A DNA stretch of 64,000 nucleotides from NCBI GenBank assembly GCA_977030845.1, contig OZ365116.1, forward strand, positions 12,958,001-13,022,000, in the 5' to 3' direction. Of the stretch, positions 9,968-54,852 are shown piece after piece; the stretch's first letter is position 1; every line of letters starts with the position of its first letter. This DNA comes from Fimbriosthenelais zetlandica (lineage: Eukaryota). The notes beneath the pieces were generated by a model, which was not told the DNA's origin, searched no databases, and saw nothing but the letters and a program-made list of their open reading frames with translations. The position numbers and the translations under genes are program-made.

Positions 9968-10159
9968 AACCTGGAACACACTAATGCGATTCTTCATGCA
10001 ATCCGTCGGCATCCGAGCTCCTATTTCTAATGATATCCAATGATTGAAATTGTGTCAGTGGTTAGCCTTAAAATTACAAATATTGGGTGTGAATAGAAAT
10101 ATAGTTTGATAGGTATCGGATGGAGACGGATAGAGAATCGGATTAGTGTGTTCCAGGCT
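9968..10159 (+). mobile_element. MITE family A (Harbinger-like), copy 1
   Basis: TIR (A)CCTGGAACACACTAAT.CGATTCT / AGAATCGGATTAGTGTGTTCCAGGCT, with TAA on both flanks. Confidence 0.9.
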
Positions 10160-10586
10160 TAATTCTACATGAATTACAGTGAATAAATATCGTTTACAAT
10201 CTCTTATACCTTATTTAAAGTCTATGTCTTAACAAGTTCTAGCAACTGGCAGAAAATATCCAAAAAATTGCCAGGCCAGCAGTGACTATGAGACACTTAT
10301 GGATTAGTAGTATTTTGATTGGTGTATTTGATATCATGTGTCTTCAGTGGATGAGAACCTGATGTTGGTAGAGATGGAACCCTAGAGTGATTCCTTTTGA
10401 CGCATGCCTGGCATATTTTTACCTAATGATCATTTGATCCCTGCTACCATCAGACGTAAACATACTTCAGTCTATTTCAAATGAGTTTGTGAAAAGCGAG
10501 ACAAAATTCCTCCCAATATCAGGGTATTCATGACAAATATTTACAACATAGATTTTTTCATTGGTAAACATATTGACTCAGGTTAG

Positions 10587-10880
10587 TTTTCCTTCCAATG
10601 GTTTGTGTATTGGACTTTATTTCGAAGTCAATTTTTCTGTAGAGAGTTTTCCAAAAGGTTTGTGTATTGAACTTTATTTCGAAGTCAATTTTTGCATACA
10701 TGTAGATAGTTTTACAAAAGGTTTGTGTATTGAACTTTATTCCGAAGTCAATTTTTCTGTAGATACTTTCCCCAAATGATTTGTGTATTGAACTTTATTC
10801 CGAAGTCAATTTTTCTATAGATTCTTTCCCCAAATGGTTTGTATATTGAACTTTATTCCCAAGTCAATTTTTCTGTAGAT
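10587..10880 (+). repeat. Minisatellite, 5 units of 57-63 bp
   Basis: Core GGTTTGTGTATTGAACTTTATTCCGAAGTCAATTTTTCTGTAGA starts at 10600, 10657, 10720, 10778 and 10836. Confidence 0.92.
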
Positions 10881-12569
10881 CCATTGGCTTACAGATATTA
10901 TCCCCCTTTCGGGAATTTACCAACAGTCAAATCCTTTAGCTAATTTAATGAACTGGCATTTCCTCCTTATTTGTTTACAGTGCACACAATCCTATATTTA
11001 AAGGGGTGATATTTGTTCCTTGTCAAACTCACTTTTTCCGACAGATTCTCCTCACCTTTCCTTCGTGGGAGGAGGAACAGTGTTTGATACCCGTACCCTA
11101 TCATTCCCCAGATAAACGTGTGCACAGTAACTCTAAGCTACCATACCCCACAATGGATGCCGAACCTATACCCCTACACATAGACTCCCCATAGGACCTC
11201 AGGTATTTTATCCAGGTACCACGACAACTGAAACTCTGGGTCATCCCTATCCATCACTTGCCCCTAGGGCTCATTTTTTATCTCAACATCCAAAAGGGGA
11301 ACAAGGCACCCTAGTGAGAAAGAAATTATTGTTTGATCAAATTCGAAAGGTTCGAGAGCCAGCACTTGGCTGATTCATTTGGTGGGCCAGTAAAACATAG
11401 TAAAGGTATAGGATTTGCTCTGAGTGGAACTAACCGACCTTTTACCTACACACATCAACCCCCCTTAAGGATATATTTTTCTGGGTGAGAGTCTGATCGG
11501 TTTTCAGGGGAGTGACAGTTGTCTTTTCTGGTTGAGGCTGAGTATATTTGTCTTCTGTGAAACCCAAGTCTGGCAGGTTGCAGTGTAGAGAGCACCGCCC
11601 ATGTAAGGGAGAGGAGGTGGGCACACATATAGTGGATGTCACCTGTGACGAACGGAGAAAAACCAAGGTTGTGTTCGAGAAGTCAAAAGTTAATCCTCAA
11701 ATCGGGTGTTAGTCATATATTATCTGCCGAGAAGGATATGGGAATCGGTGTTTGACAAACTGGACAGATTTACTCTATGGAAGATGAAAGGTCTATTGGA
11801 AAGTTGAACTTGGGTCTGAAAGTTGAAAATTAAGAAGACCACGAGGTTAAAGGTTATTCCCACCATTGCCCTTTTTAAAATGTCACTGACCTGAGAAGCT
11901 TGCCAACATCCTTGCTCCAAGTGAACAAATCTGTCCATGTGCAAACCGATTGTCACTGAGAAGTTTCATATTCACTTGCCTTCAAACTACTTACATTCCT
12001 GCAAGTAGATCTTACTGATAAAACCATTACTTGTACATACAAGATTTGTCAAGAAACCCTAACATTGGTGTGAAAATACAACAGAAAAGGTGCAAGACGT
12101 GATAGAAAACCCACCAAATTAAATACCTATCATTATGAAGGAAATTGACCTTTTTTTGTCAACCCTTTCAGGGGATCTTTAGTAGCTGGATTTTTCTTCT
12201 TCATGCCCTAGTAGAGGTCGCTTGTAGTAGAGCAATGGTCGTTAGCTCTAGCAGCCTTGCGGCCATGCCGTTAGGTATGTGTAAATCAAACTTGAAGTGA
12301 CTTTTGAGATTTGTTTACCTGAACTTAAAAGGTCCGTTTAAGTTTGCGAAAGAGTACAAATCAGTGATTTGAGGGTCAGTCTGTAGTCAACCAGGGCCTT
12401 CTCACTATATCTACAAATTACAGCCTTGTATTGACTGAGTCAAGAAAATTACCCCCACCAGAACACTACCTACAACTGTATGAACCCTACTATACACACT
12501 GTCACTTGTCTCTGTTAGTAAACCAAGTCATGTTGGTTACGCTAAGTGCTTTGTTTTATCTTGAGGCTA

Positions 12570-12836
12570 ATAGCCTGAACCCATTGAGCTACGATCTCCC
12601 TACAATCTGCTTTACGATCCAATTACGATTAAAAATTTTCAAAGTATGTGGATATACCTACTGAAAAAGTATGTGGAATGACCCTAAAATCATAGTCCTG
12701 TGTGCTCTGCGTTTTTTTCATGGATCAGAAAACTCTGCGGTCTCATTTTGAGCATGCTCAAACAGATCGTAGGCAGATCGTAGCTCAGATCGTAGGGAAA
12801 TCGTAGCTCAGATCGTAGCTCAGTGGATTCAAACTA
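12570..12836. mobile_element. MITE family D (267 bp, TAA TSD, subterminal AGATCGTAG repeats)
   Basis: Left TAGCCTGAACCCATTGAGCTACGATCT pairs with the reverse complement of the right end (TAGTTTGAATCCACTGAGCTACGATCT). TAA at 12567-69 and 12837-39. Five (C)AGATCGTAG units on the right are mirrored by CTACGATCT-like units on the left. Confidence 0.75.
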
Positions 12837-15800
12837 TAATGCCTGAACTAACTGGATAATTCTGTGAGCATTGGATGATGGAAAGAGATGGAGAAACTGT
12901 CCTCTCATATCTCACACGATATGTCACTGCTGCCTGAAAATTGTGTGCACAAGACGTTGCACCCACTGATTGTGTTGGGTTGAGGTATAAGTGAATTCAT
13001 ACCGCCAAGATCAGACAGAAAGCAAAGGCAAATGATGAAAAGCAAGCTATTCTGTTGTTATAAATATCATTCCACCTAAAGCGAGGCAAGGTCACAACGA
13101 CCAGACCCAAACCAATTGATTCACTACTTACGCAACAAAGAAGAATTCTAATGTGTACACACTTGATGCATGATGACAGAGGAGTAAATATTATTTCATA
13201 ATAAATAAGACCTCTACCTCTGAGGGAGGGATTACCGGGGTAATCTCACTCGATCTGCGCACATCCAATGGGAAAATTCTTTGTAAGGGAGTGTCCACAA
13301 TAATGTGTATCCACCATAAACCACCCAACTAACTCAATAACAGTCACAGATTGTCTGCTATAGGTGTATAGAGAGCAAGTTTCTATGTCAGAACTTCACA
13401 CTATGTGTGAGAATTCCATACCGGCCGGTGCATGGGGCACTATACATAGAACATGGGATTTTTCTGAATCTCCGAGAATTATGCTAATAACTAAAAGGAA
13501 GATTTCCGAGAAAGTAGCTCAGGAATGGCAGATAGAACCTGGTAGGAGATCAAATGATGTATCTATACGGGCCGTTTCCGCCCTACACACCTAATCCATA
13601 TGATGGAGACCAACCTCTAAATATCAGCGGATAACTGTAAACAGAATACCTGGTATGCTTCAGCAACTTATAACTCTATTATCTCTCTGATATTTTATTA
13701 TTTTTTTATCTTTTTTTGGAGAAGTTTTCCCTTGTAAATGATGATTTGTTGGGTGCGCGGGGTAACAGGGAAGGTTTTGTTTTTCGGGGTTTGTAACCAG
13801 GGTAGAGATATTATGTATTTTCTTGGCAGTCCGGGATATGGATAGTCTGCAGGTGTGTCGAGGCATTTAAGGAATTTTCCTTGTGGATTCAGACCTCGGA
13901 TCATAAGGCTGTAATGCCCATAGCCAGATGGAGATGGAGGGGGTACTGTACTAGAAATTCCATTTATCTATCTACATTACTATATATAAATGTACTTTGA
14001 GACATGCATCCATTAATTTACCTCAGTAAATAGATTAATATCCGCTTATTACTCAGTCTTCGGCGTCCAAACTCCCTGAAACTTTATGCACTCTTCCAGA
14101 AAATGATAATTAATTACATTGGTTCCGACTTCGAAATCGAAGTCAATGATGTTTAAAACATTTCCTTCTCTCAGGTATTTAATTGAATCTTTGAGCCCAA
14201 ATCACATCCAATATATAGTGTCCCCTACCCCCCGTCCACCTATATCCCTCAGAGCCTGTGTATTCAAGCGAAATATTTTTCACAAATGAAGCAGAGAACA
14301 CACAAAAGGCAATCCCACAGTATAGACTTCTATATTATCCTTTCATTTCCTTTGTAGATCAAGAATAATTTTTGCTAGGAAGTCTTATATGGCGTTTTTT
14401 TATTATCAGGAAAGATAGTCTTGGAAAAATGAAAGATATGTAAGATGTGTTTGAACATATGCTAAGAAGTATATGTCACTATGTCCAATACAAAGTATCA
14501 TACCTAATTTGGAAATGACTGCTCTTTATTTGGGACGTTGGCACTGCAGAAGTGACGTCATTGTTGTCACGTGCCCCCACGTCACATCCATATGTTAAAT
14601 CACTTGTGACAGACAGTCCAAATTAGAATGGAACGCGCCAGAAATAGCAAATCTCGCGAGGTACGGACCTTCACGAGAATCGAAGAAAAACAGTGCCGAC
14701 TTCGACCGACATAGTAGACATGGAATGCGAACCATCTTGAAGTCATTTTGTAAAAGGACTAAGCTTTTATCCTGGAATGGATGAGGCTGAAAGAAAAGGA
14801 GATGTAAAAAAATTCACTTTGTCTCAAACACTAAGAGAAATAGTGCCTTCATCTCTCTTGTATATTATGAGTGTTGTTGGCTGGAAGGTTGGCTATAACC
14901 AAAGTGAATTCTGTGATGGATACAATTACTCATTGTAGGCAATCACTTCATCAACTGAGTATCTTTACATAAACAATTAAATCAATTCTTCAAATTTCTA
15001 CCCTTTAACGTTAGACTAACATGTCTATAATTGACGGCATTGTTATTCAGAGCAGATTCAATTTATGACATACCATAAACCAAAACTTAATTCAATGTCA
15101 TATATCATGCACTAAATACCAACATATATATGCACATGTATATGTATGCAAAATTTTAAATATCATAATACAACTCCAAATGGCCTTAGGCTAACAATTC
15201 CTCCAGTCCCTTTACCAAGGGATTTCAGTACAGAATTCCGGAGTAAAATACCAATATCTCTTCTATAGCATTGTATTACTAAACGCAAGTCAGAAAAGAC
15301 CAAATTCTATCTTTTGAAATGTGATGTGTGCACTAGCCATTAGCCGTGTAACCTGTCTGTGTATTAATAGAGAATTACGGCAGCTAGTAACCCGATAACA
15401 CTGATCCTCAAGGCCCTTTCTTATTCAACACCAAATGCTCGAGGCCTCCAGATCAGCTTTCATAAAATCTCGGCACAGAGAAAGGCACCGCGAGTTGGTA
15501 TATAGCATCTGACTTCAAAGAATGGAGTTGGAGTTGGAGTAAGAGTATTGGATTGACATTATTGATATGAAAGAAGCGTGATTTAAAGTATACAAACTTG
15601 ACTCTCTATCGTCATCTTACATTTGTTGTTTGCTCGTGAGAGATCTATATTCAAGGACTTTTACTCCTTGATGTTTAGGCCGTTTCCTCGGCTATTTGTC
15701 TCGATCGGAAGGGAGTTTATCTATTCGCATTTAGATTAATAAATGAAAAGGATTTTTTGGAAAGCTCTTATACACTATTTTTACAGACAGAATGGAGGTT

Positions 15801-16386
15801 TAATTTCAACTGATCAAAGGTATCTATTCAATACCAATTTGACGGATAGTACCAAGAAGTATCAGTCAATCACAATTGATTTATAGAGTTCTGAACGAAC
15901 ACCGATCGTTCGACTACTGCAGAATCCAGTCCATGAACTTTGTGTCCTTTTGATTGATGGCAATTCTTTTAGGGAAAATCCCAGACCCGGTTATGTTTTA
16001 ACCTATTTTATAAGAGAGAGAGAGAGGGATCGTTTATCATGTGATAATGCATTCTTGAATGGGTTAGACAGGAGCCTGCCGGGGGACAAGCAGGCAAATC
16101 AGCCAGCTCCATGATACTGGGTGGGGGCGGGGGGTGGGGGAGGAGTGCTGGGGTTAGACATGGGAGAATGATTAGAGCCCAGAGGCTACTCTGTAACAGT
16201 TGGTCTAACAGGAATGTCCCGATGACAAATCGTGCAAAATTGATTCATTTTCATTCCTCAAAGAAAAAAAAACATTTTCCACGAAAAATACTTTAGACTT
16301 TATAAAGTGTGTACATACTTTTTTAAAGCAGTTACATTATCTTGTATCTCCTTCGTTTTCTGGGCAACTGTCTTTTCTTTTCGTTG

Positions 16387-16589
16387 AGCCTGGTCTCCAC
16401 TGCTGTGATTTTGCTTACGACACCTCTGCGACAAAGCTGATGCTTGTGTTTCAATGACAAATTTACCAGTGGAGGACGGCCTTAAGTCCTTGAACACTTG
16501 GGCCACAATTTACAAATTTTAATCCTACACAAGCATCACCTTTGTCGCAGTAGTGTCACAAGCAAAATCGCAGCAGTGGAGACCTGACT
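16387..16589 (-). mobile_element. MITE family C, copy 2 (203 bp)
   Basis: TIRs AGCCTGGTCTCCACTGCTGTGATTTTGC / GCAAAATCGCAGCAGTGGAGACCTGACT. The core is inverted relative to copy 1. Confidence 0.88.
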
Positions 16590-17063
16590 TAAAACTGTCA
16601 CCATCGTCTTACTTATAATTGACCACCTCATCACCCACCCCCCTGTCATATTTCCCCCTCCCCACTCCCCCTCCCACTCACTCCTCTCTTCCTTGTCTAT
16701 CATCCTCCACCCCCACACCCCCCGTCCCCCGTCTACTCGTGATCTGGGTTCCTCCAGGGCCGCTCGGTGACACGTTCCTGTACTATTGGTGCCATATGTG
16801 TCTCACTGGAGGAGCCGTATTGGCACGTGATAGCACGTGACGGTATGTATGACGCGTCTCTCTCCTCCAGGTCTTATGACCTTCTAAAGTCCCGCAGATA
16901 ACAACTCATCTTCCCCCCCCCCCAGACGACCTCATCTCTCAACATGTCATCTTCCCTCTTTATCTTCTGGTCCAGACTCCCAATTTTGTTGACTGTAGAT
17001 CAGTCTCATAAGTTGATTTTAGTCAAACCTATAGTGTCCGTCTCATTCTTGATCATAACCTCT

Positions 17064-17290
17064 GGGGCATGTTTCATAGGATTATGAGCAATTTTAGGCC
17101 TATGGTTAATATTTGTTTTGAAACAGGCAATGCTAGTTCTATGGCCAATATTCGTTTTGAAACAGGCTCCAGGGACCTGTTTTAAAAGGACTATGAGCAA
17201 TGCTAGGTCTATGGCTAATATTCGTTTTGAAACAGGCTCCAGATTCCCATTTCAAAACAAAAAGCCATAGACTTGTAATGTTTCTTTTGA
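17064..17290. repeat. Array of palindromic family-E units bounded by GGGGCAT.TTTCA / TGAAATATGCCCC
   Basis: Three tandem ...CTATGGCTAATATTCGTTTTGAAACAGG units are followed by an inverted unit. Homologous to the palindrome at 20166-20235. Confidence 0.7.
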
Positions 17291-17572
17291 AATATGCCCC
17301 TGATCGTTCTATTTCTGAGCACTCATTGCTAATGTCCAATTACAATAACCTGCAAGGCTCATCATCTATAGGAACGACAATGAGTTATAGTCTAATTGAA
17401 AAGCTCATGTATCATACATGTTTTTCTCGTGTCACTCATGTTTATCACAACATGTTTGCCGTGTAACAGATACCATGTGTTTTTGAGGTAGTCTGACGTA
17501 CTTTGACGGAGGTCTTTGACACTGCCTGTGTGAGTGTCAGGAACCCGGAATAAGGCCTGATATATAGGCATT

Positions 17573-20419: not shown

Positions 20420-20616
20420 AGGCATTACTCCATTTCTGCGACTTTGATTCCGACAAAGGTAATGTTTGTGTCGCAGTAAAAAATGTGCCAGTGAAGGACG
20501 GCCTTATAAGTCCTTGGACCAAAATGTCCTTGGTCCTTGGAATAAATTGATTTTATTTCGACACAAGCATCACAGTATAGTGTCGCAAGCAAAATCGCAG
20601 TAGTGGAGTACAGGCT
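20420..20616 (-). mobile_element. MITE family C, copy 3 (eroded left end)
   Basis: Right end GTGTCGCAAGCAAAATCGCAGTAGTGGAGTACAGGCT|TTA, core CCAGTGAAGGACGGCCTTA, degenerate left TIR from ~20427. Confidence 0.8.
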
Positions 20617-22948: not shown

Positions 22949-23151
22949 AGCCTGGAACACACTAATCCGATTCTCTATCCGGATTCTCTGTCCAAAACCA
23001 TATTTCTCTTCACATCAATTGCTTGTAATTTGAACAGACCTTTACACCTAGATAATACTAACCACTGACAAAATTTCAATCATTGGAAGTCATTAAAAAT
23101 GGAAGTTCTGATGGCGACGGATTGGAGAATCGGATTAGTGTGTTCCAGGCT
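22949..23151 (-). mobile_element. MITE family A, copy 2 (203 bp)
   Basis: Perfect 26-bp TIR AGCCTGGAACACACTAATCCGATTCT, TTA TSD, inverted core. Confidence 0.93.
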
Positions 23152-23490
23152 TTAGACAGAGCAGCGCAAGAGCAAGGTTCTTATGCTCTCCCTGACGAAG
23201 GGCATTGACCTTTTCCCCCTATGGATGTCAGGCAATTTTGTCGCATGCGTTGGCGGGTGGGGGCTGGAGCATCTGGAGGGTATTGGTGTGACCAGGGAGA
23301 CATGTGATGAGCAACTTGGGAGCTTGTAGTGACTGCATGGTACGACTGTCACTGGAACTCCACCACCCACACTCTCTACTCCTGACAATTCTCTATGACA
23401 CGTCATATGTGACCATTTTGCCAGGCATGTATAATGTCTTGGTCACTGTGTGACAACCTAACATGTGTAAAATATATGTAAAATACCTGT

Positions 23491-23693
23491 AGCAAGGTCT
23501 CCACTGCTGCGATTTTGCTTGCGACACTACTGCGACAAAGGTGATGCTTGATTCACAATAAAATTTATAAAATTAAGTTGAAGTGTCCAAGGCCTTAAGA
23601 CCGTCCTCCACTGGTATTTTTTTTATTGTGACACAAGCATCACCTTTGTCGCTGTAGTGTCGCAAGCAAAATCGCAGCAGTGGAGTCTTAGCT
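23491..23693 (+). mobile_element. MITE family C, copy 4 (203 bp)
   Basis: TIR ...CTCCACTGCTGCGATTTTGCTTGCGACACTAC / GTAGTGTCGCAAGCAAAATCGCAGCAGTGGAG... Confidence 0.9.
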
Positions 23694-24170: not shown

Positions 24171-24885
24171 TGTTTCCTGGCAAGTATTTCAGGGGCGGAT
24201 CCAGCAATTTGAAGAGGGGGGTTCGAATTTGAGTTGGGTTGGGAGCAATGTCCCCGTACATACCTATAGAAATGAAGAAAAAAATCACATATAAATAAGA
24301 CCGTTCAGTACTGAAACCTACATATATGGTAGACTCAAACTGTCCCACCGACTTTATTTGACCACATTTTTTCCAGATCTTTTATTTCTTCCTTCCCCCC
24401 CCCATTGAATTCGCCATTACATCTTTAACGGAAGTGGAAATGGAGTGGAAATGGGCATAAGGAAGTGAGAGGTGGAATTAGGGAAATAAGACAATTGAGT
24501 TGGAAAAATGGGACATTGAAGGATTATAATCTATATGTGTGTGGGAGGAGGATGGGGGATGACGAGGAAGAAGAATGTTACAGCATGAATTGTCACATGA
24601 TTCATTCATTTCATCATGTAGACCATGTGCTCCCACTTCCTTATATGATTTTACAGACAAGGAGACTGAATTCTTACCACATCAGTCAAACTTTACCATC
24701 TGACACTAGTACTCAACCAGCGTCTGTGAGGGCCACCCTCACACACTGAGTATAAGTTATGTGGGATGGCAAGATTGAATTCACACTTGAAAGAAAAAGA
24801 GAGGATGTTCAAATGGGATGCTTCATTCCAAAATGTGATTCAGGCTGGAACCCCCTACACACTATTAGCCTCCTTAATAATCCCC

Positions 24886-25080
24886 GAAACACACTAATCC
24901 GATTCTCCAATCCGTCGCCATCCGATCCCCTATTTCTAATGATATCTTGAGATTGAAATTTTGTCAGTGTTTAGCCTTACTTCAGTGCAACGGACTGTTC
25001 AAATTACAAGCATTTGGTTTGAATAGAAGTATAGTTTCGGATGGCGTTGGATAGAGAATCGGATTAGTGTGTTCCAGGTT
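24886..25080 (+). mobile_element. MITE family A, copy 3 (left terminus eroded)
   Basis: AACACACTAATCCGATTCTCCAATCCGTCGCCATCCGA ... AGAATCGGATTAGTGTGTTCCAGGTT|TAA. Confidence 0.88.
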
Positions 25081-25518
25081 TAATATCGATATCAACTGTG
25101 AAATAAGCATATCAAAGATGAAATATTCTCACTAGAAATTGTTACGGAATCTCTCACATTATATGCCAGTATGAGATAGTATGTGAGAAAGATTCAGAGA
25201 ATTATAGGCCACATATAGAACCTTAGAGGGGAGGGAGGAGGAGATGTTGGTAATGGGTTTAAGTTTTGAACCTCTTTACCCCTGAGACGTGAATGGAATG
25301 TGCGACGACGACGGGGAGCAGGTCACAGGAGCAGCTCACTGAGCTGACCCCGGAGTGTGTGACAGAGAGGTAGCAGATGATCATCCTCCTCCAGTCACTG
25401 TCGCCAGATTCTGAATCACCTTCACAAGTAAAACCCCCGCAATCTCTATACTCACTCGCTCCATGGCCACTTCATACTAATTTCAAGGATTCTTTCGAAA
25501 TTTCTAAGTCACTTCTAT

Positions 25519-25729
25519 AGACTGGAACACACTAATCCCATTCTTCAATCCATCGCCATCCGATCCCCCATTTCTAATGGCATCCAATGATTGAAATTTT
25601 GTTAGTTGTTTGCCTTGGGTAGGTGTAAAGGTCTGTTCAAATTACAAGCATTTGGTGTGAATACAAATATAGTTTCGGACAGCTATCGGATGGAGCCGGA
25701 TAGAGATTCGCTTTAGTGTGTTCCAGGCT
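25519..25729 (+). mobile_element. MITE family A, copy 4
   Basis: AGACTGGAACACACTAATCC ... TAGTGTGTTCCAGGCT, with a full family-A core. Confidence 0.88.
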
Positions 25730-32409: not shown

Positions 32410-32594
32410 TGCTGGGCCCACACAGAGGCGATTCTCCAAGCGATAGCTGCGCGAAACTATATTTCTAGTCACACCCAATGCTTGTAATTTTAACAGTCCT
32501 TTACACCTAGCTAAGGCTAACCACTGACGAAATTACAAGCATTGGGTGTGACTAGAAATTTAGTTTCGCGCAGCTATCGCTCGGAGAATCGCCT
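32410..32594 (-). mobile_element. MITE family B, copy 2 (A/B-intermediate, right end truncated)
   Basis: TAA|TGCTGGGCCCACACAGAGGCGATTCTCCAAGCGATAGCTGCGCGAAACTA ... TAGTTTCGCGCAGCTATCGCTCGGAGAATCGCCT. Confidence 0.88.
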
Positions 32595-34505
32595 ATATAT
32601 ATAGGGGCACTGCATAACCATCATGAAACGGTCTGAGTGCTATATTGTGAATGTACGGTAAGAGGGACAGAAAGGGCGTGTGTAGATAGAGATGTAAAGG
32701 ATTTGCATGGAATTTTGTTCTACATATCTTTGGAAGCTGATGGCGATAACGACTGGGAGGGAACATAGTTAGATCTCTATGAGATACTGACTCTATGTCA
32801 CTCATCTCAATTTAAAGCGCCAGTTACCAGTGATGTCTATATACCCATAAAGAAGAGTATCAAATGATAACTTTATCATAAATATTGACAGTTCCTTTAA
32901 TATCGGTACCATGATGTCCCAACATTATCACTGGGAACATCCATGGGGTGTGCATGCACCTCCTTAAGTTGATGTTGGACTGATATAAAAAGGAAAAAAT
33001 GTCCATGCTGCTGCTGGGGGACCCATCCTAAAAAGGGCAATATGGGGCACTTTTATAGAAGCCCAGAGGGTACTTAAAGAATGCCAGTGTTATTATATAT
33101 ACACCCAATGTAGGACGATCATTTTAAGTGGACACGAGCCACCCTTTCTTCTTGTTTCTCATCTTTTTTCCCTCTTTTCCTCCTCCTCCTCCTCCTATAT
33201 GTATTATTCCAGTAGGTTTTACCCTCGCCTTTTCAATGCTTACTCATCCCTTGCCTGTAAATGTACAACTTCTGGATTCTCTGTTTCTTTTGGCATGGCT
33301 CACCTTTTTGGTGCTTGGAACCTTTTATCTCAGTAGCTTTCTAGTTATCTCCTTCATATTATAGGGTGTCTCTGGATACTTTTAGCATTTAAGTTAAAGG
33401 TTGGTGTAATTATGCAATTCTGAAATGGGGAATCACCGAAGGGAAGGAGTTCTGTGGAAACTATTTGACTGTTACATGAGATCTGTGAAAGTTCTTGTGT
33501 GTGTGGTTGCTTCCAAGTGCTTGTATGTCAACCACAAATCACGCACGGTACCATTGACATCCGGAAGCAGGTGTCGCAAACAGTATCTTTCCTCTAAAAC
33601 TTTTGATTTTCATATTCTAACGAGTATATATAAAGGTTTCTTTCATTTCTGACGGTATTAAATCAAATCAGTGTTAAGAAAACGTTGGGGTTTTTTAAGA
33701 CGATCGTTTTCTCAGAAGATCTCTTATTTTGTAAACTTTGTTTGAAATCGCTTGAGTGTTTGCAACCAAGTAAACAAGACCGACTTTGTGATTGGAAGCA
33801 GCAAAGATAATAGAATGAATTTCATTCTATGCTCATTCGAAGCAGATAGATCCCATTCCAGATTTGCGGGCCCTAACTGCAAACCACAGATTGCCAAGAC
33901 ATGCAATTCTAAATATATGAAAAATATGAATCTTGTATTTTTCTCTTCTTTATTAACACAAAATATAAAGTCTATATCTTTTGGCAAGTCGGAATGTATG
34001 GAACTTCTGAAGGTCAGGTCTGTGGGGAATGGGGTGGAATGGGTAGCTTATAGCCCCGCGCTTAGCACGTGCATGCGTGGGTTGAACAAAATGATGTTTG
34101 CTAGAGGAGTGGGAGAACCCCCACCTACACAACACTCGCTTCTTGCATACCTCCCCAATGAACAGACCAAAAATGAAAGAAATTTGTCCATTTATTCATT
34201 TTTGAGCATCAGGATGGATAGTCCATCACTTCCAAATGACCATTCAGAAAAATCATCCAGAGACATTCTGGAGACAATATTAATTAAGAATGTCTCTGAA
34301 AACTGTACCTGTTAATAGCTATGTTGTCACTCAGAAGTAGACCTTCATAGGTGGATCATGGTAGGAGGTGGGGTCAAGCGGGGTCACGACCCCCTTTCAG
34401 ACATGAATTTTTGACGCTCAAATAGTAAATTTTTGTGGGTGGAAGCCTTCCCCCTCGGCTTCTTTAGAAAATGTTGGATCCATTCCTGATCTCCTAATTG
34501 CTACA

Positions 34506-34995: not shown

Positions 34996-35178
34996 AGCCT
35001 GGAGCACACTAATCCGATTCTCCAATCCGTCGCCATCCAATCCCCTATTTCTAATGACAATTAAAGATTGTAATTTTGTCAGTGGTTAGCCTTACTTATA
35101 GGTGGGGAGGTCTGATCAAATTACAAGCATTTGGCGTGAAGAGAAATATATTTTCGGACAGCTATCGGATGGAACCGA
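34996..35178 (+). mobile_element. MITE family A, copy 5 (right TIR missing)
   Basis: TTA|AGCCTGGAGCACACTAATCCGATTCTCC plus core. Similarity ends at ~35178. Confidence 0.88.
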
Positions 35179-36809
35179 ATTGGAATGAATTACAAGAATA
35201 AATTTTATGTTCTTCACTCATTATTTCCACCAATCTGCAACAACAGAAGTAGAAATTGCACCCGAAAGGTCCATATAACTAGACCCACACCCTCCGGATT
35301 ATTGCTTGCTTGTACCAATATATTATGTATTAATTTATTGAGCCTCAGCCTCACGGCAATATCAAGTAACCAAACGTAATGGTAGAATGTGTTCACGTAA
35401 TGCATTTATTTGTATGCATAGCTCTTACGTGTTCTCTCTTCCATTCACAGGTTTGTTTTATGAGGAGATAAAAACCTTGTTTGATAAATGAGGCTATTTA
35501 TGAGTATGAACATGATATTGTGCTCTCTCCGCCCTCACCGATCACAACTCTCATATCTCATCCTATTCATATATTAATAGAGAAAGGTATGGGTGTTGAG
35601 AGATGGTTCAACATCACATCAAACCAGGTATTACTTAAAGTAGGGGGAGGAGATGATGAAGAAGTGGATGACACCTGGGACTTATGAGTAACTTAGATCA
35701 CAGGGTATTCAACCGACTGTACTGTCTTTTTCTATGATAATTTTCGACTGATTTTTATGAAAAATGTGTAAAGTTTTACGACTTGTGATTCCCAGCTATG
35801 ATTCATTCATTCAGACAATATCCCCCCGTTATATTGATCAGAGGAAAGTTGTTTGAGAGAATGATGTGAACAATAGATCTAAATGTCCATGTTTCTTTCT
35901 TCATTTCATTTCATACAGTTCCCATACACTGCTTACCAAAATGAGCCAAAATGTTTTTTCTCAAAGCTTTAGTCCTTTGGTGAAGATGACAATAATGTAC
36001 AATGACATTGTACATGGTAGAATTGTTCTAACACCTGCTACATTATATTGAAAACAAAACCGTGAGTTTTCTCTGCTCATCTTGTGAAAATAATTTGCTC
36101 TTCGCACCTTCCCGCCCCTCAATAGCACCTTTGGAAAGGTGTCAAATTGTGGTTGAATCAAATTGCATTATACATATTCCATTACTAAGCAATGTAATGG
36201 GTGATATAGTTTCCCCACATTAAATGAAATCAACAGCAAGTTCACATACACACCGAGGTCAATGTGCACCTGTGTTGGGGGCAAATCATCAAACTTTGAT
36301 TTAACTACAGTAAGGAAGAAAGATCTAATGTATGAGCAAATGTATATCATTATTTTGAACTCCATAAATCCTCAGAGATTACCCCTGACTGTCTTCCTAT
36401 AATCACCAAGATGAGAGATTGTATCTAACATATAGATTAAGATACATAGAAGCATGTATATCATGATAGACTACCTGTAGCTCATTATGTGATGACCTCA
36501 GGTATTGTGATGGGAGTATAACAATGATGTAGATGATCACTACTATTTATATACAAGGGCTTGTCAGGACTCAAAGGGTCACATTGATAGATGGGCAGAG
36601 CTACTTCATGAGCTGTGGTCACACCAAACCAACCGACCGGCCGGTTGATATGAATCTAAATCAGATTGCTTTTAAGCAAACTATAAGTGCTTGGTTATTC
36701 TGTTACAAGAATGAGCAGATATTTAAAGTGCGATCGGTGACTTTCACGGTTCAAAGTCCAGTTCTTTATATAGTTGGTCGTTGATTTGGTCAGCGCATCC
36801 CTGGTCTAA

Positions 36810-37014
36810 TACCGGAACCACACTGAGGCGATTTTCCCAAGCGATGAAGAGCGATATAATATATTTCTAACCACACCCAATGCTTGTAAGTTTGTCAGTG
36901 GTTAGCCTTAGCTAGGTTTAAAGGACTGTTAAAAATACAAGCATTGGTTGTGACTAGAAATATATACTATCGCTCTGTATCGCTTGGGAAAATCGCCTCT
37001 GTGTGGGCCTGGCA
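36810..37014 (+). mobile_element. MITE family B, copy 3
   Basis: TAA TSD. TACCGGAACCACACTGAGGCGATTTTCCCAAGCGA ... TCGCTTGGGAAAATCGCCTCTGTGTGGGCCTGGCA. Confidence 0.92.
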
Positions 37015-38890: not shown

Positions 38891-39137
38891 TTGAGGGATT
38901 TAGACATTATACCATTACATTACACCTGCAGGTTTCATAGTTAGCTTCCTCATCCTTCTATGCTATCCTAGAGTTCCAGATGAGTTCCACAGAGCCTTTC
39001 ATCCTTCTCAGGTATAGCCAACACACTGGAAAAGGATGACTACAGTCTCTCTCATTGAACGATGCATGATACTGCTTTTGAGGGTATGATAGTTCATAAT
39101 GTATAGAGGGAGACTGAGATACATTGGGTAGACTATC

Positions 39138-39565
39138 TGTGAAGTGTTTTCACTAAATGAGTCTAAAAGTCGCAAAAATGGATTTGGAGTTAGATTACCA
39201 GCGATCCAATGATGTATAGCATAATATTATGTGAAAAATATGTACATTTTTAATAACATTTCAAAATATAAAAGTAGTGACAGCGGGAACTAGATAAAAT
39301 ACCCATTTCAGACAATTCTCTGTCCAAGTGAAAGAAATCTTAAAGGGACAACACGCACAAAGTTGAACTTTTCTCGATTTCACCCACAAAAATAGTAACA
39401 TATCCTTGCTTTTATTGCGAAAATGCTAAGAAATATAAGTGGCTTGTGTACAACGATTTCAAGCCTGTAGCGCTGAATGTCATGGTGCGACTTTAAACTC
39501 ATTTAGTGAAAACACATCACAGCACATTGTGCGACTTTAGACTCATTTAGTGAAAACACATCACA
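39138..39565. mobile_element. Non-autonomous TIR element (family F) with a tandemly duplicated right TIR
   Basis: Left TGTGAAGTGTTTTCACTAAATGAGTCTAAAAGTCGC (39138-73) is the inverse of GCGACTTTAGACTCATTTAGTGAAAACACATCACA, present twice (39487-521 and 39531-565, 44-bp period). Confidence 0.75.
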
Positions 39566-42125: not shown

Positions 42126-42320
42126 AGCCTGGAACCCACTAATCCGATTCTCCAATCCGTCGCCATCCGAAACCCTATTTCTAATGACATCTAAAGATTG
42201 AAATTTTGTCAGTGTTTAGCCTTACTTAGGTGTAAAGATCTGTCCAAATTACAAGCATAAATATAGATTCGGACTGTCGGATGGCGCCGAATAGAGAATC
42301 GGACTAGTGTGTTCCAGGCT
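42126..42320 (+). mobile_element. MITE family A, copy 6
   Basis: TAA|AGCCTGGAACCCACTAATCCGATTCTC ... GAGAATCGGACTAGTGTGTTCCAGGCT|TAA. Confidence 0.92.
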
Positions 42321-45263: not shown

Positions 45264-45496
45264 TGCCGGGCCCACACAGAGGCGATTTGCCCATGCAAGC
45301 GATGCAGAGCGATAGTATATTTCATAGACAAATGTTTATGGTATATTTCTAGCCACAACCAATGCTTGTAATTTTAACAGTCCTTTAAACCTATCTAAGT
45401 TTAACCACTGACAAAATTACAAGCATTGGGTGTGTAACTTGAAATATACTATCGCTCTGCATCACTTGGGAAAATCGCTTCTGTGTGGGACCTGCA
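45264..45496 (-). mobile_element. MITE family B, copy 5 (with ~30-bp internal insertion)
   Basis: TTA TSD, family-B TIRs, inverted core, extra CATAGACAAATGTTTATGG segment. Confidence 0.9.
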
Positions 45497-48883: not shown

Positions 48884-49894
48884 TGTATTATTCGTATTGC
48901 AATAATTATGATTCGGGATGCAATGGCCTTGGCTTTTCTGGGGATACCAGTTGGTAACTTTATTATGTTTCTGGGGATCCCAATTTGTAACTATGTTTCT
49001 GGGGATACCATTTGGTAACTATATGTTTCTGGGGATACCAATTGGTAGCTATGTTACGTTTCTGGGGATACCAATTGGTAAAGATATGTTTCTGGTGATA
49101 CCAATTGGTAAGTCTATGTTTCTGGGGATACCATTTAGTAACTGTTTCTGGGGATCCCAATTTGTAACTATGTTTCTGGGGATACCAATTGGTAACTATG
49201 TTGCAGTTGTTCGTACAGCAATCTATTTCCTACCGGGACACCAATGAGGAAGCACGTGAGGTTGTTTGTCTTCCTCATCCTGTAGCTAACAGCAGGCGTT
49301 CAGTCTTAAGTTATGAACTGTTATTTTCTCGCCTTATTTTGTAAACAGGCGCAATGGGAAAGAGAAAACTTTGATGTGAAGCACAAAGCACTGGCCTGCA
49401 ACTAGATACTCCTCCAGACTAAAGAAGTAATTATTTAAATTCAGATCTCCGCAAGCTGTCTATTTAATTCTGATATGATGCACTGAATATTGATGGGACC
49501 TCAGAGGAGGCGGTGAGGGGAGGGGAATTTGTGGTATTTGAGGAGGAAATCTTGTCTATTGAGTCTATTGAGAATTAGTGCGAGTTTATGATTTGTATAT
49601 CCCCTTATTGTACGATGAACCTCGCCAATGACGAGGTTCAGCGAGGGCAACGTCGCCGAGCGTTTGCTTCGTTCAAGTACTGTTTCCTTTAAAATAAAGT
49701 ACTGGACAGTTGCTTGTTATTGCATTGACCAAGCACTGTTTTTTCAAAAATATTCCTTGTACAATAGAATCGCCCGACGAAGGTACCCTCGCCGACCCTC
49801 GCCATAGTTACCAATTGATATCCCCAGAAACATATATTTAGCAATTGGTATCCCCAGAAAAGGGCATTGCAATTATTGCATTACGAATAATACA
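48884..49894. mobile_element. Foldback-like element with 24-bp TIR and asymmetric 29-bp subterminal arrays
   Basis: TIR TGTATTATTCGTATTGCAATAATT / AATTATTGCATTACGAATAATACA (23/24). About 9 units of TTTCTGGGGATACCAATTGGTAACTATG lie on the left (48935-49200) and 2 inverted units on the right (49806-49860). Confidence 0.8.
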
Positions 49895-50097
49895 AATCAT
49901 TTTGAAGACCCTACATGACCAATGGGAGGAATAGCTCTATAGACAAAGTTAATGATTATAGATGTCTATTCGGTCAGCTAGTAGGACTCTATAGTAGTTA
50001 TGAGGTTTAGAATCTGGAGGCCAGACGTACTGGTGCCTGCGGCTGCCTGGCTGTCCACTCCACTATTTCATATAAACCACTTTATATGGTTTGTGTA

Positions 50098-50392
50098 CAC
50101 TCTAAGACCAACCAAATGTTGGATGGAGTGGCCATTCAATACAAATCATATATAGCTCAAAACAATGAGGCTACAGAGTGCATTGGTATATCGATGGTTG
50201 TATCCATTTTACTCTATGGTTGAATGGATTGAACTTAGAGTAAAATGTTCGTTTTACTCTAAGGATTCACTCACTAATCGACAATTGTTGTAAATGCAAC
50301 AGTTAACTAGCCTTACTTCTGTGAGAAAAGAGAGAGGTCCAAATATTGGGAATCCAACCGAAAGTACATTTTGTCATTTTGGGTTTAGAGTG
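50098..50392. mobile_element. Candidate CMC/EnSpm-like MITE (CACTCTAA termini, TA TSD)
   Basis: TA|CACTCTAA ... TTAGAGTG|TA, with internal TTTTACTCTA/TAGAGTAAAA motifs including a perfect 12-bp stem (50205-16 / 50236-47). Confidence 0.55.
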
Positions 50393-51649
50393 TAAAAGAA
50401 TGGCTCCAATATAAAAGAGTTTTTTTCATAAAATATATTTTATCGATCCACATGAAGAAGGATCTCACGAGAAGAAACATTTCAACTAACATAAATATCA
50501 GTTTTACTAGGTTTGGGGTATGGATCTTGCCAACAACTCATTGGATGAATTCCATGAAAAAGATACATAAAAAAATACTAAATGTGATTATCTCGGGTCG
50601 AAACAGTATATCAAAAGTTGATATAAATGTATATACAGCTTTGATATACTTCTGATCAGTCAGTCTCTGTTTGTGTGTATATATGTTTACCAGCCAGAAT
50701 GAGGGGCCAACAAGATATATAGCTAAATGGTCATGTCTATGATAGATGTACAGCGTTCAGAGAATCAAAATATCTATTCATGACGGCTTCACGCCATATT
50801 GGATTTCATTTGATTCAAGCAAACAGGAAGATTGACTGGTTGCTGCGGCTAAATTCTAGGGTACGTCTCATAGCCGCTTTAACAAATTACCGAAACAAAT
50901 CGACTAACAAGCCAGCCTCAATACGATACTCTACTTAAGTCCTTTCAAGCTTTTAAAAACTCGAATTTTAAGTAAAGTTGTAGCAAAGTAATCGCAGCCC
51001 TTATCGGGGCAGCCTGTTGGCATACCTGCTTCAAAATTCTTTTGTATTCGGCCGGTTGTATGATCGGTTAAAAGGCAGAGTATGCTTTCTTCCGCGGCAA
51101 ATATATAACCCTCCGATTCCTCCCCTTTAATTATAATATATTTTAGTCCTATTTTGCAGCGTTTTACTGTTCAGGGAATTTAATCAAAGCTTTGGCAGAA
51201 ATCCAAAAGTTACAATTTTTATGAGGATTAAGATTTTTCAGAGAATCATACACCTTTGTAGGTCTGTGTATATATATGGGATGTTAGCTCAGTTGTTGGT
51301 CAGTAGAAACACATAGCCCCAAGACACCTCAATTGATGTCCATCTTGACCATTACGATGTCTAATTTCCCAGCACAGGTACAAATGGAAGGTATGCAGAC
51401 AAAGGTGGACACAGGGCAGAACAAGTGGTCAGGACCTATGTTGTATATACTCGCCCTATGTGTATGTATACAGGCTCGTGGCCTTAGGGCGCCAAATACC
51501 GAATATACTTAAAGCACTGTAACATTCCTAGCCCAGTCAATGAAAGCTATCTGCATCAACAGCTTACTCTTTATGGAGGAAAAGAAAAAGGAAATTCACT
51601 GTATTGAGACCTGAATTTGAAGGTTAACTTGACGTCCTTGTCTCCTTTA

Positions 51650-51852
51650 AGGTGGGACTCCACTGCTGCGATTTTGCTTGCGACACGACTGCGACAAAAG
51701 TGATGCTTGCGTATCAACAAAATTGATGAATTGTATTTGAAGTTTCTAAGGCCTTAAGGCCGTCCTCCACTGGTACATTTCTCATTGCAACACCTGCATC
51801 TTATTTGTCGCTGTAGTGTCGTAAGCACTGTCGCAGCAGTGGAGTCCCACCT
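51650..51852 (+). mobile_element. MITE family C, copy 5 (203 bp)
   Basis: TTA|AGGTGGGACTCCACTGCTGCGA ... TCGCAGCAGTGGAGTCCCACCT|TTA, a perfect 22-bp TIR with TSD. Confidence 0.92.
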
Positions 51853-52163
51853 TTAGCGAATAGAGAATATTTAATGACCCATGGTACATGATCAATATCT
51901 GATACTTTTCACACTTGGGTTGTAAAGTGACATGGAATTTGATTGTAAAGTTCCATGTCCTCCTCTTTTTTAATATTTTTTTTTTGCACTGGAGGATGTG
52001 ACGAGGGATATATTTATACGAGATTAGATGCAGTACTTAGGATGGTTCGAACTGAAGCTGATCAAAAGTATGGGTCTGTTAAAAGAGGGCGAAAGAGGAA
52101 TGATATCGTTAGGGTACGGAAACAGACCAGGGGGTGAGAGGGTGCAATAACAACAGTTGTATA

Positions 52164-52322
52164 NNNNNNNNNNNNNNNNNNNNNNNNNNNNNNNNNNNNN
52201 NNNNNNNNNNNNNNNNNNNNNNNNNNNNNNNNNNNNNNNNNNNNNNNNNNNNNNNNNNNNNNNNNNNNNNNNNNNNNNNNNNNNNNNNNNNNNNNNNNNN
52301 NNNNNNNNNNNNNNNNNNNNNN
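52164..52322. other. Assembly gap (159 N)
   Basis: Run of N in the sequence. Confidence 0.99.
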
Positions 52323-54309
52323 GATATGCTAAAGGATATATCTATAGGGCCTATATATGGTATGAAATAATGAAAAAAGCAAACGCAAGGCGACACTTTA
52401 TTATGGAACCTAAAAATCATTTTATTATATTTCTTTAATAAATATGATGACCAGGTCAATTCAACATTACAAGATTTTATTGAAAGGAGGAAACATTTCT
52501 TGTGGCTCTTCTCCATGTGCACCACTGAAGGTGTGACAGAGTCGAGGCCCACCAAGTTTTTCTATTTTCAATAACACCAACTCCCCTTCATCCATCACCA
52601 TTATTCTACGTGTGTCTATAAGATCTGAAAGCTTTTTCTTTGCGCCACAACATTCAGAAAAACTCCCATGTACTGCATATACCAGTTCTTCAACTCAGAT
52701 GAATTTTACTTTACATATTTTAGAGCATATATGACCATTGACTGACAATGATATTGTGATTAATTGGAATTGCCGCCAATAGACATGATTAGGGTATATA
52801 TTCATCAGAGGGCACCACTGGTGGTATGAGTGACGTCATTGATCCCAAAATCAACAAATATTTCCTTGAAATAACTACCTAGATATTCTATATTTTTTCA
52901 TCAAATGCATAAATTTCAGAGTAAATAATTCATTTTTTTGTGTTTATAAAACACTACATGATACTAGTTTTTTCTCTTTAATGAAATATAAAATAATTAG
53001 ATTAAAACTGTGCTGATATAGGTGTAACCCAGGCACCAGTCTATAATGTTCCCACTCACTCTCACCTGGTCCCCTGCTCTCCTCAAAAACATCTCCGCAT
53101 TCCAGACTGAGGCTCAAATTTCACCTCAATCTTTCGTTCGGCGATTAATCCCCGCGGATTGTGAGGGTAAACTATTTCAGGTAAAGCTTTGGTCGGGTCA
53201 GATTTAGCGAGGAATAAATAGGCCCGTCTCTGATCTCAGGCCGAATCATATGCCCCACCGACTAAGAAATGGTTATTGTGCTTTTAAACCATAAGATAAT
53301 ATTGGTTTTATGCAAACTTCTAGATTAATAAACTCTTGATATTGGCATGCACGACCTGCGCAGGAGGTACACTATACTTTTCTTGCAGCTTGCCTTGCTT
53401 TTCTTAAATTGAAATATTCATAATAAGGCATCGTATTGCCAATTAAAATGAACATCATTTGCCATTTTGACTTTGATACATTTAATGGATTGGATGGGAG
53501 TTGTCAAGTGTTCAATCTTGGTGTAAAGATATATACATGTATTTTTTGAGGTACATGTATCACTATTTCTGTTCGGATGCAAGCCCAGTCACACATTGGC
53601 GCATCTTAGTCCCTATATAGGATCTTTATTCTATACTCATTGCTATAGGACCTAATGGCCCTAGAATGCTTCTCTATGATTATTGGTATTAAATGTCTTA
53701 AATGAATTATTACGAATCCACCCTCATACATTTTACCGCTCCTTGCTTTATATTTTTCTTCATTACATGCATGAACAAGCAAAGGTACATATTTCAGATT
53801 CCATGTTGAAACCTGATACTTCTACAATCAATAAAGATGAGAATTTATGCTAAATCAGAGGGACAATCAACTTCCTTTGAGGTCCAAATCAATATAGCTT
53901 GAATGGCCTTTTTGTTCGATAGAATATGCTGATGAAAATGATTAGTATATATACATATTTACTATTGATGTGATTATGAATGTGTCAATTATACCTATGA
54001 TTTAATAACAGGGCTGAGTTGTGCTTTGTGCCGGGGTATCAAATGTTGTAGAGTGTCATATTAATTAAGTTGTCAGGCCACAAATTGTACCTCTTTATAT
54101 AAGTGGAGGGGTCTCAGTTATGATTATGCCTGACATAAATCCATGTCACCCTTGGTTGGCCTCACAAAACTCGCACCGGGGGTAATGACAGTGTGTTAAA
54201 GTCTGTTAAATCTTCATGAAATGTATAATGCAAAAGGAATCGGTCTATAATCATTCCTGGTGGCTCATCTTTTCTCGTTTTTTTCATCAGCTTTTATTCC
54301 CCTTTCTCC

Positions 54310-54570
54310 TCCCACTTTCCTTTCATCTTTCTCCCTCCATCTTTCCTTTCCATGTTCCTCCCTCCATGATCTTTCCTTTCTATCTTCCTCCCTCCATCTT
54401 TCCTTTCTATCTTCCTCCCTCCATCCTTCCTTTCCATCTTCCTCCCTCCATGATCTTTCCTTTCTATCTTCCTCCGTCCATCTTTCCTTTCTATCTTCCT
54501 CCCTCCATCTTTCCTTTCTATCTTCCTCCCTCCATCTTTCCTTTCTGTCATCCATCCTTTCTTCCATTCC
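54310..54570 (+). repeat. Polypyrimidine minisatellite (27-30 bp unit CCTCCCTCCATCTTTCCTTTCTATCTT)
   Basis: About 8 units. It explains the four overlapping ORFs 54216-54748. Confidence 0.92.
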
Positions 54571-54647
54571 TCCCTCTTGTCTTTCTCTTCTCTGCATGTT
54601 TTCTTTCTCATCGATGTCCTTGCCATTCCATCCACCTTTCCCTCTAA

Positions 54648-54852
54648 TGCCGGGCCCACACAGAGGCGATTTCCCCAAGCGATGCAGAGCGATATTATAT
54701 ATTTCTAGTCACACCCAATGCTTGTTATTCCATCAGTGGTTAGTTTAAATAGGTTTAAAGTACTGTTAACATTTCAAGCATTGGTTGTGACTAGAAATAT
54801 ACTATCGCTCTGCATCTCGTGGGGGGCAAATCGCCTCTGTGTGTGCCTGGTA
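54648..54852 (+). mobile_element. MITE family B, copy 6
   Basis: TAA|TGCCGGGCCCACACAGAGGCGATTT ... AAATCGCCTCTGTGTGTGCCTGGTA|TAA. Confidence 0.92.

What the first reader, a model, noticed from the sequence alone, without database searches (positions are those of the whole stretch)
9968..54852. Families A and B: conserved ~115-bp core inside divergent TIRs, the reverse of usual MITE evolution
Seen: A core TATTTCTAATGACATCCAATGATTGAAATTTTGTCAGTGGTTAGCCTTACTTAGGTGTAAAGGTCTGTTCAAATTACAAGCATTTGGTGTGAATAGAAATATAG aligns almost base-for-base with B core TATTTCTAGTCACACCCAATGCTTGTAATTTTGTCAGTGGTTAGCCTTAGCTAGGTTTAAAGGACTGTTAAAATTACAAGCATTGGTTGTGACTAGAAATATAC. The outer 30 bp match at only ~19/30, and the changes are mirrored at both ends. 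Established: related MITE families usually share TIRs and differ inside. Inference: either the core was re-housed in new termini (switching to a different transposase partner), or it carries a selected function such as a protein-binding site or small-RNA template. The GTCAGTGGTTAGCCTTA motif is retained in most of the 13 copies.
Basis: partly seen in the sequence, partly recalled or inferred. Interest (0 to 1): 0.72.

Follow-up and report, generated by a model that had tools for sequence, protein, structure and literature searches.

The report
Sister Harbinger MITEs with re-coded ends
Two families of small, non-coding jumping-gene relics share a middle part but differ at their ends, most likely because the ends were re-tuned to a different transposase; the pattern is real but has a published precedent and shows no sign of a host function.

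Summary
The window has exactly 13 copies (7 A, 6 B) of a ~200-bp palindromic element. Each full copy is flanked by a 3-bp TAA/TTA duplication, so these are Tourist-like MITEs of the PIF/Harbinger superfamily. Between family consensuses the ~103-bp core is 85% identical and the ~50-bp ends are ~53% identical.

- The ends are not foreign. A, B and a third family C share one end layout (nGCCnGG..CAC tip, CGA motifs at 20, 32/33 and 43 nt).
- Copy B2 is an intermediate. Against the A right arm it differs at 5 of 14 tip bases and at all 6 bases just 5' of the CGA motifs (TCCGA becomes GGCGA/AGCGA/CGCGA), but at only 2 of 37 other subterminal bases.
- Within families the core decays as fast as the ends, and the 17-mer decays at the family average. 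Nothing suggests host selection on the core.

Best reading: sister MITE lineages whose recognition ends were re-coded for a different transposase/Myb-like partner. Coral CMITEs (PMC2872659) are a precedent. An earlier scan note (s1-210764, unchecked) reports a similar pattern elsewhere in this genome. The assembly gap touches no copy.

The parts
9968..10159 (+). Family A copy A1 (192 bp, loop partly deleted), TSD TAA/TAA
22949..23151 (-). Family A copy A2 (203 bp), TSD TAA/TAA in element orientation
24881..25080 (+). Family A copy A3 (200 bp), TSD TAA/TAA, left tip decayed
25519..25729 (+). Family A copy A4 (211 bp), TSD decayed (TAT/GAT)
34996..35190 (+). Family A copy A5, truncated at its 3' end (right tip missing), left flank TTA
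42126..42320 (+). Family A copy A6 (195 bp, 13-bp core deletion), TSD TAA/TAA
46589..46797 (+). Family A copy A7 (209 bp), TSD TAA/TAA
19505..19707 (+). Family B copy B1 (203 bp), TSD TTA/TTA; folds as a nearly perfect 95-bp-arm hairpin
32410..32614 (-). Copy B2: intermediate subfamily. B-type tip and GCGA motifs, A-type spacers, core 96% B-like. One tip is partly replaced by a (TA)n run. TSD TAA/TAA on the + strand
36810..37014 (+). Family B copy B3 (205 bp), TSD TAA/TAA
43065..43262 (+). Family B copy B4 (198 bp), TSD TTA/TTA
45264..45496 (-). Family B copy B5 (233 bp, with a ~26-bp internal insertion), TSD TTA/TTA
54648..54852 (+). Family B copy B6 (205 bp), TSD TAA/TAA
8123..8307 (-). Family C copy C1 (context): same end layout as A/B, different interior
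16387..16589 (+). Family C copy C2 (203 bp)
20420..20616 (.). Family C copy C3 (decayed; orientation uncertain)
23491..23693 (-). Family C copy C4 (203 bp)
51650..51852 (-). Family C copy C5 (203 bp), TSD TTA/TTA

Best explanation
A and B are sister families of Tourist-like MITEs: non-coding, ~200-bp, whole-length palindromes moved in trans by PIF/Harbinger enzymes. Both descend from one ancestral palindromic MITE.

Each arm has three parts:
- a 14-bp tip (nGCCnGG..CAC);
- three or four phased CGA motifs, with the CG at 20, 32/33 and 43 nt from the tip;
- a core arm.
The two core arms enclose a ~40-nt asymmetric centre.

The tip and the motifs form the recognition module for the transposase and its Myb-like DNA-binding partner. 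In one lineage this module was re-coded. Tip bases changed, and the dinucleotide 5' of every CGA changed from TC (A: TCCGA) to GG, AG or CG (B: GCGA), with the same change on both arms. The element then answered to a different autonomous Harbinger.

The core is passive cargo that diverged at the ordinary rate (about 13-15%). It looks conserved only in comparison with the re-coded ends.

Shown: the anatomy, the TSDs, the statistics, the intermediate copy B2, and the equal decay of core and ends after insertion.
Inferred: that the motifs are protein-binding sites, that two distinct autonomous partners exist, and the direction of change.
For: - TSD: a 3-bp TAA/TTA duplication flanks 11 of 12 full-length copies (and my reading). 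This is the PIF/Harbinger hallmark (TWA, PMC13668399).
- Structure: whole-element hairpins, DNA fold z = -18 (B1) and -13 (A7).
- Common MITE ancestor: A and B share the same asymmetric centre and the same junction.
- Shared end layout: the CG of the motifs sits at identical distances from the tip in A, B and C (my count on the consensuses).
- Mirroring: end changes are mirrored (14 of 19-23) while core-arm changes are not (0 of 4-7). Symmetry is kept only where function is expected.
- Localised change: A right arm vs B2 arm differ at 6/6 positions 1-2 nt 5' of CGA, at 2/37 other subterminal positions (p = 5e-6) and at 5/14 tip bases.
- Graded, congruent series: A-ii, A-i, B2, B appear in that order in both core and ends.
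- No extra constraint after insertion: core and ends decay alike, there is no CpG effect, and the 17-mer decays at the family mean.
- Literature: in PIF/Harbinger elements the Myb-like ORF1 protein binds terminal or subterminal sequences and recruits the transposase (PMC2836001, PMC13668399, both citing Sinzelle 2008).
Against: - No autonomous Harbinger lies in the window, so neither partner nor its ends could be compared.
- Only 13 copies from one 64-kb window were available, and B2 is a single copy (its two arms do agree).
- The category 'positions 5' of CGA' was defined after seeing the data.
- At the ends A, B and C are about equally distant (59-66% over the first 32 nt). That also fits replacement of the ends from separate sources.
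- Nothing measures the neutral rate in the master lineage, so a mildly constrained core cannot be excluded.
Confidence: 0.55

Rival explanations
1. Chimeric re-housing. The ends of a different but related Harbinger element were joined to the interior of an existing MITE, by template switching during gap repair or by recombination. On this view core and ends have different histories.
For: - Identity steps up fairly sharply at the TATTTCT boundary (sliding identity 40-65% rising to 90-95%).
- At the ends A, B and C are about equidistant, while only A and B share a core.
- Abortive gap repair is a commonly proposed origin of MITEs (PMC13668399).
Against: - B2 keeps A-type spacers throughout the subterminal region (35/37) and differs only at the tip and motif positions. 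A single breakpoint cannot produce that.
- The core and end trees are congruent, with B2 basal to B in both.
Confidence: 0.17
2. The core is conserved between families because it helps transposition in cis, for example as a stem or bend, a shared host-factor site or an enhancer of excision. This was proposed for coral CMITEs. Only master copies with an intact core amplify.
For: - The same idea is offered for CMITEs, with reference to internal sequences that enhance MITE transposition (PMC2872659).
- The core is part of a long hairpin.
- This kind of selection acts only on source copies, so it is compatible with neutral decay of inserted copies.
Against: - In family A the core arms have lost symmetry (24/31 paired against 30/31 in B), and A-B core changes are never compensated or mirrored. 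The stem itself is therefore not maintained.
- Family C has the same end layout and length with an unrelated interior (z about 2), so this core is not needed for this kind of end.
- A-B2 spacers in the ends are at least as conserved as the core.
Confidence: 0.2
3. Host-level function of the dispersed copies. On this view the core is a protein-binding site or a template for small RNAs and is kept by purifying selection in the host.
For: - Long hairpins are the usual substrates for small-RNA processing.
- There are weak sub-threshold Rfam similarities to long-hairpin miRNA families (41.5 bits against a gathering score of 230).
Against: - Within-family divergence of the core equals that of the ends (A 9.2% vs 8.0%, p = 0.45; B 5.6% vs 6.6%, p = 0.60).
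- The 17-mer decays at 7.2% per site, the family average.
- Copies carry deletions and insertions in the core (A1, A6, B5).
- Nothing reaches an Rfam gathering score.
- Expression could not be tested because no run was listed.
Confidence: 0.05

Closest known systems
Tourist-like MITEs of the PIF/Harbinger superfamily (e.g. mPing with Ping/Pong; Harbinger-1M_cIno derivatives)
   Same: - 3-bp TWA target duplication, terminal inverted repeats, about 200 bp, non-coding and multi-copy.
- Terminal blocks of roughly 80-100 bp are retained.
- They depend on a transposase plus a Myb-like DNA-binding protein that recognises terminal or subterminal sequences (PMC2836001, PMC13668399).
   Different: - No autonomous partner is seen in the window.
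- The elements are palindromic over their whole length.
- Two families share the interior but carry different recognition motifs (TCCGA against GCGA).
CMITEs of the corals Acropora millepora and A. palmata (Wang et al. 2010, PMC2872659)
   Same: - Several MITE families whose internal region is more conserved between families than their TIRs.
- A short terminal motif is kept in all families.
- The authors also discuss cross-mobilisation and a cis role for the interior.
   Different: - CMITEs are about 100 bp with TTAA duplications and the CCYT tip of piggyBac.
- The elements here have TWA duplications, a Harbinger-type tip and phased subterminal motifs.
- Here an intermediate copy shows that the ends changed at specific positions rather than diverging throughout.
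Family C of the same window (five copies)
   Same: Same TSD, same tip skeleton (AGCCTGG..CAC), CGA motifs at 20, 32 and 43 nt, the same modal length (203 bp), and palindromic.
   Different: Its interior cannot be aligned with the A/B core (z about 2). This is the usual MITE pattern of related ends with a different inside.

Membership tests
Tourist-like MITE (PIF/Harbinger-mobilised) | 3-bp target site duplication of consensus TWA (TTA/TAA) | tested here: met
   11 of 12 full-length A/B copies have identical TAA or TTA on both sides, and A4 is decayed. A 4-bp TTAA reading is excluded because the fourth base varies.
Tourist-like MITE (PIF/Harbinger-mobilised) | Terminal inverted repeats, small size, no coding capacity, many copies | tested here: met
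   Perfect 26-bp TIR in consensus A and ~85-bp arms in B. Length is 192-233 bp. There are 13 copies in 64 kb. No ORF of 130 aa or more lies within any copy; two frames overlap the first bases of B6 and have no Pfam match.
Tourist-like MITE (PIF/Harbinger-mobilised) | Ends shared with an autonomous element encoding a DDE_Tnp_4 transposase and a Myb/SANT-like protein | not testable with these tools
No solo ends or longer elements with these ends occur in the window. The rest of the genome could not be reached.
CMITE group (conserved interior, divergent TIRs) | Internal region more conserved between families than the TIRs | tested here: met
   85% against 53%.
CMITE group (conserved interior, divergent TIRs) | TTAA duplication and piggyBac CCYT tip | tested here: not met
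   The TSD is 3-bp TWA and the tip is nGCCnGG. These elements are an analogue of CMITEs, not members.
MITE-derived hairpin RNA / miRNA gene | Match to a curated RNA family, or evidence of processing | tested here: not met
   No match at gathering score. The best sub-threshold hit scores 41.5 bits against 230 needed. Expression could not be tested because no run was listed.

The most novel reading that the evidence does not exclude
The A, B2, B series records a stepwise change of DNA-recognition code in a natural transposon system. All phased subterminal sites on both arms switched from TCCGA to GCGA, and five tip bases changed, while spacers and core stayed in place. If two autonomous Harbingers with correspondingly altered Myb-like proteins exist in this genome, this would be a clean natural example of how a MITE 'chassis' is re-addressed from one transposase to another. 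It would also be a ready-made pair of orthogonal end/protein sets.
Probability: 0.3. Interest if true: 0.55.

Novelty: new member of a known kind. Interest (0 to 1): 0.33.

Why it matters
How MITE lineages outlive their autonomous partners and come to be moved by new ones is still poorly documented. Most evidence is for shared ends with unrelated interiors. Here the reverse case comes with an intermediate copy that localises the change to the tip and to the two bases next to each subterminal CGA motif. That gives a specific, testable prediction about which bases the Harbinger transposase and Myb-like pair read. It does not point to a new host function or a new kind of element.

Tried and rejected
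- **Sequencing runs, for expression or small RNAs and to name the organism:** none was listed.
- **The core in other organisms:** two pattern scans of metagenome contigs and one of prokaryotic genome contigs found nothing.
- **More DNA of this genome through the neighbouring Kolobok transposase exon:** the best relatives are only 57-60% identical and come from another organism's contigs. Those loci (L001, L002) hold no copy of the element.
- **Rfam and tRNA scans:** nothing at threshold. A resemblance of the centre to tRNA A/B boxes, which I considered by eye, was dropped because the A box does not fit and ARAGORN finds nothing.
- **CpG hypermutability as a cause of faster end decay:** rejected. 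CpG sites change at 6.7-7.1% and other sites at 6.5-8.3%.
- **Ongoing gene conversion between A and B cores:** rejected. 13-15 diagnostic core positions stay family-specific in every copy.
- **The first MAFFT alignment of the right ends:** it misplaced a 10-bp indel and inflated the B-B2 end distance, including the 0.41 branch. The arm-by-arm alignments are the ones to trust.
- **Sinzelle et al. 2008 (PMC2290759):** not held. Its result is cited only through PMC2836001 and PMC13668399.
Full report
**What is there**

A profile built from the aligned copies finds exactly 13 elements in the window and nothing else. There are no fragments, no solo cores and no solo ends. Seven belong to family A and six to family B; coordinates are under 'parts'.

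All are 192-233 bp and non-coding. No ORF of 130 aa or more lies within any copy. Two such frames (54216-54647 and 54260-54748) overlap the first bases of B6 and have no Pfam match. Eleven of the twelve full-length copies are flanked by an identical 3-bp TAA or TTA. The fourth base outward varies, so the duplication is 3 bp and not TTAA. A TWA duplication is the hallmark of PIF/Harbinger elements (PMC13668399), so these are Tourist-like MITEs.

The assembly gap at 52164-52322 lies between copies and touches none. It does not bear on this finding, and I did not try to fill it.

**Anatomy**

Each element is a palindrome over its whole length. B1 folds as single-stranded DNA at -77.6 kcal/mol (z = -18) and A7 at -54.4 kcal/mol (z = -13). 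Consensus B matches its own reverse complement at 180/206 positions. Consensus A has a perfect outer 26 bp and looser inner arms.

Reading inward from the tip, each arm has:
- a 14-bp tip (A: AGCCTGGAACACAC; B: TGCCGGGCCCACAC);
- three motifs built on CGA, with the CG at 20, 33 and 43 nt from the tip in both families (the A right arm carries a fourth motif on an extra 10-bp unit);
- a 31-bp core arm.

The centre is about 40 nt and only roughly symmetric. A and B share the same departures from symmetry there, and the same junction. They therefore descend from one ancestral MITE and not from two independent deletion derivatives.

- Consensus A and B are 88/103 (85%) identical in the core and 51/97 (53%) in the ends (p = 6e-7).
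- The arms are mirrored and not independent, so I repeated the test with one arm only against the whole core. This gives p = 6e-5 (left) and 0.002 (right).
- 14 of the 19-23 end differences are the same change on both arms. None of the 4-7 differences in the core arms is mirrored (p = 0.007).
- The core and end trees have the same topology (A, then B2, then the other B copies). The branch between families is 0.08 substitutions per site in the core and 0.50 in the ends, while terminal branches are alike.

**No sign of selection on the inserted copies**

Divergence of copies from their own consensus is the same in core and ends. For A it is 9.2% against 8.0% (p = 0.45); for B it is 5.6% against 6.6% (p = 0.60). 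All CpGs lie in the ends, but they do not mutate faster than other sites, so methylation-type decay does not distort the comparison.

The 17-mer 'retained in most copies' has 1.23 mismatches per copy, or 7.2% per site, which is the family average. Several copies have deletions or insertions in the core (A1, A6, B5). Whatever keeps the core similar between families acted on the source lineage, not on dispersed copies in the host. The power of these tests is limited to 13 copies.

**The ends are homologous and changed at particular positions**

Copy B2 is an intermediate. Its core is 96% B-like, though it keeps the A state at two diagnostic positions. Its tip and motifs are B-type, and its spacers are A-type. 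Its two arms agree with each other.

Comparing the A right arm with the B2 arm:
- 5 of 14 tip bases differ.
- All 6 bases lying 1-2 nt 5' of the three CGA motifs differ (TC in A; GG, AG or CG in B2).
- Only 2 of the other 37 subterminal bases differ (p = 5e-6).

I defined the category '5' of CGA' after looking at the alignment, so the p-value is descriptive. Even so, the spacers are at least as conserved as the core. The main B subfamily then changed further in its spacers.

Within family A, copies A1, A2 and A4 share two B states in the core. Together this gives a graded series, A-ii, A-i, B2, B, that is congruent between core and ends.

**A third family supplies the usual pattern**

Inverted-repeat scanning turned up five copies of a family C. 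It has TWA duplications, the tip AGCCTGGnCTCCAC, GCGA motifs at 20, 32 and 43 nt, and a modal length of 203 bp. Its ends resemble those of A and B about as much as A and B resemble each other (z = 3.0-3.6 against 4.2). Its interior does not align with theirs (z about 2).

The same window therefore holds both the usual MITE pattern (related ends, different inside) and the reverse one. Family C also shows that the A/B core is not required by this kind of end. An earlier scan note on this window (s1-207692) had described a 'shared terminal grammar' of three families, and my counts agree with it.

**Most likely mechanism**

In PIF/Harbinger elements the transposase lacks an obvious DNA-binding domain. 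A Myb-like ORF1 protein binds terminal or subterminal sequences and brings the transposase to the ends (PMC2836001, PMC13668399, both citing Sinzelle et al. 2008, which I could not open).

The phased CGA motifs are the natural candidates for those sites, and the tip for the cleavage site. The differences between A and B are concentrated there and are kept symmetric there and nowhere else. I therefore read the ends as a recognition module that was re-coded to answer to a different autonomous partner, while the core rode along at the ordinary rate.

What is shown: the anatomy, the localisation of the changes and the neutral decay. What is inferred: the binding role of the motifs, the existence of two partners and the direction of change.

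**Rivals**

1. *Chimera by template switching.* It fits the fairly sharp identity step and the near-equal distances among A, B and C ends. It does not explain A-type spacers inside B2's ends.
2. *A cis role of the core in transposition*, as suggested for CMITEs (PMC2872659). It cannot be excluded. However, A's core arms have lost pairing without compensation, and family C manages without this core.
3. *A host function.* It is disfavoured by the decay data and could not be tested for expression, because no run was listed.

**What is known**

Wang et al. [quoted passage not shown] They discussed the same two ideas, a cis role for the interior and cross-mobilisation. Those elements are piggyBac-type (TTAA duplication, CCYT tip). 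The present elements are an analogue in another superfamily, not members.

The pattern is therefore uncommon but published. The added value here is the intermediate copy and the motif-level localisation. Another scan note (s1-210764, unchecked) reports a similar shared core with different TIRs elsewhere in this genome.

**Limits**

- I had one 64-kb window, 13 copies and no autonomous element.
- I had no access to the rest of the genome or to related species.
- The organism was not identified here.

**Verdict**

This is a new member of a known kind, of modest interest.

Noticed in passing
window 8123-8307, 16387-16589, 20420-20616, 23491-23693, 51650-51852: A third palindromic Harbinger-type MITE family (C). 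It has the same tip skeleton, GCGA motifs at 20/32/43 nt and TWA duplications. Three of its five copies are exactly 203 bp. Its interior is unrelated to the A/B core.
   Followed up: yes
window 12585-12810: Another inverted-repeat element whose arms are built from repeats of GCTACGATC (ACGAT, a third variant of the NCGAT motif). One more repeat unit lies just outside the right arm. Its superfamily and TSD were not worked out.
   Followed up: no
window 39137-39565: A ~430-bp element with 30-bp inverted ends and a duplicated right end (arms at 39492-39522 and 39536-39565).
   Followed up: no
window 32590-32614: In copy B2 part of one 14-bp tip is replaced by a (TA)n run, which would probably have disabled that end.
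   Followed up: partly
window 45318-45345: Copy B5 carries a ~26-bp insertion next to a short repeat of the ATATTTC segment, at the boundary between end and core.
   Followed up: no
all 13 A/B copies: All 5-9 CpGs per copy lie in the ends, and they are not mutated faster than other sites. These elements show no methylation-type CpG decay.
   Followed up: yes
window 57938-58357 and 60506-60976; L001, L002: The THAP-domain exon (Pfam E = 2.6e-16) and a transposase exon of the Kolobok element at the window's end. The closest relatives (57-60% identity) lie on megabase eukaryotic contigs of an ENA assembly (ERZ25767047), again next to a THAP ORF.
   Followed up: partly
window 22949-23693 and 24881-25729: MITEs are clustered. 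A2 and C4 lie 340 bp apart, and A3 and A4 lie 438 bp apart in the same orientation. Overall there are 18 Harbinger-type MITEs in 64 kb (about 6% of the window).
   Followed up: no
window 4220-4374: A second assembly gap (155 N), outside the finding.
   Followed up: no
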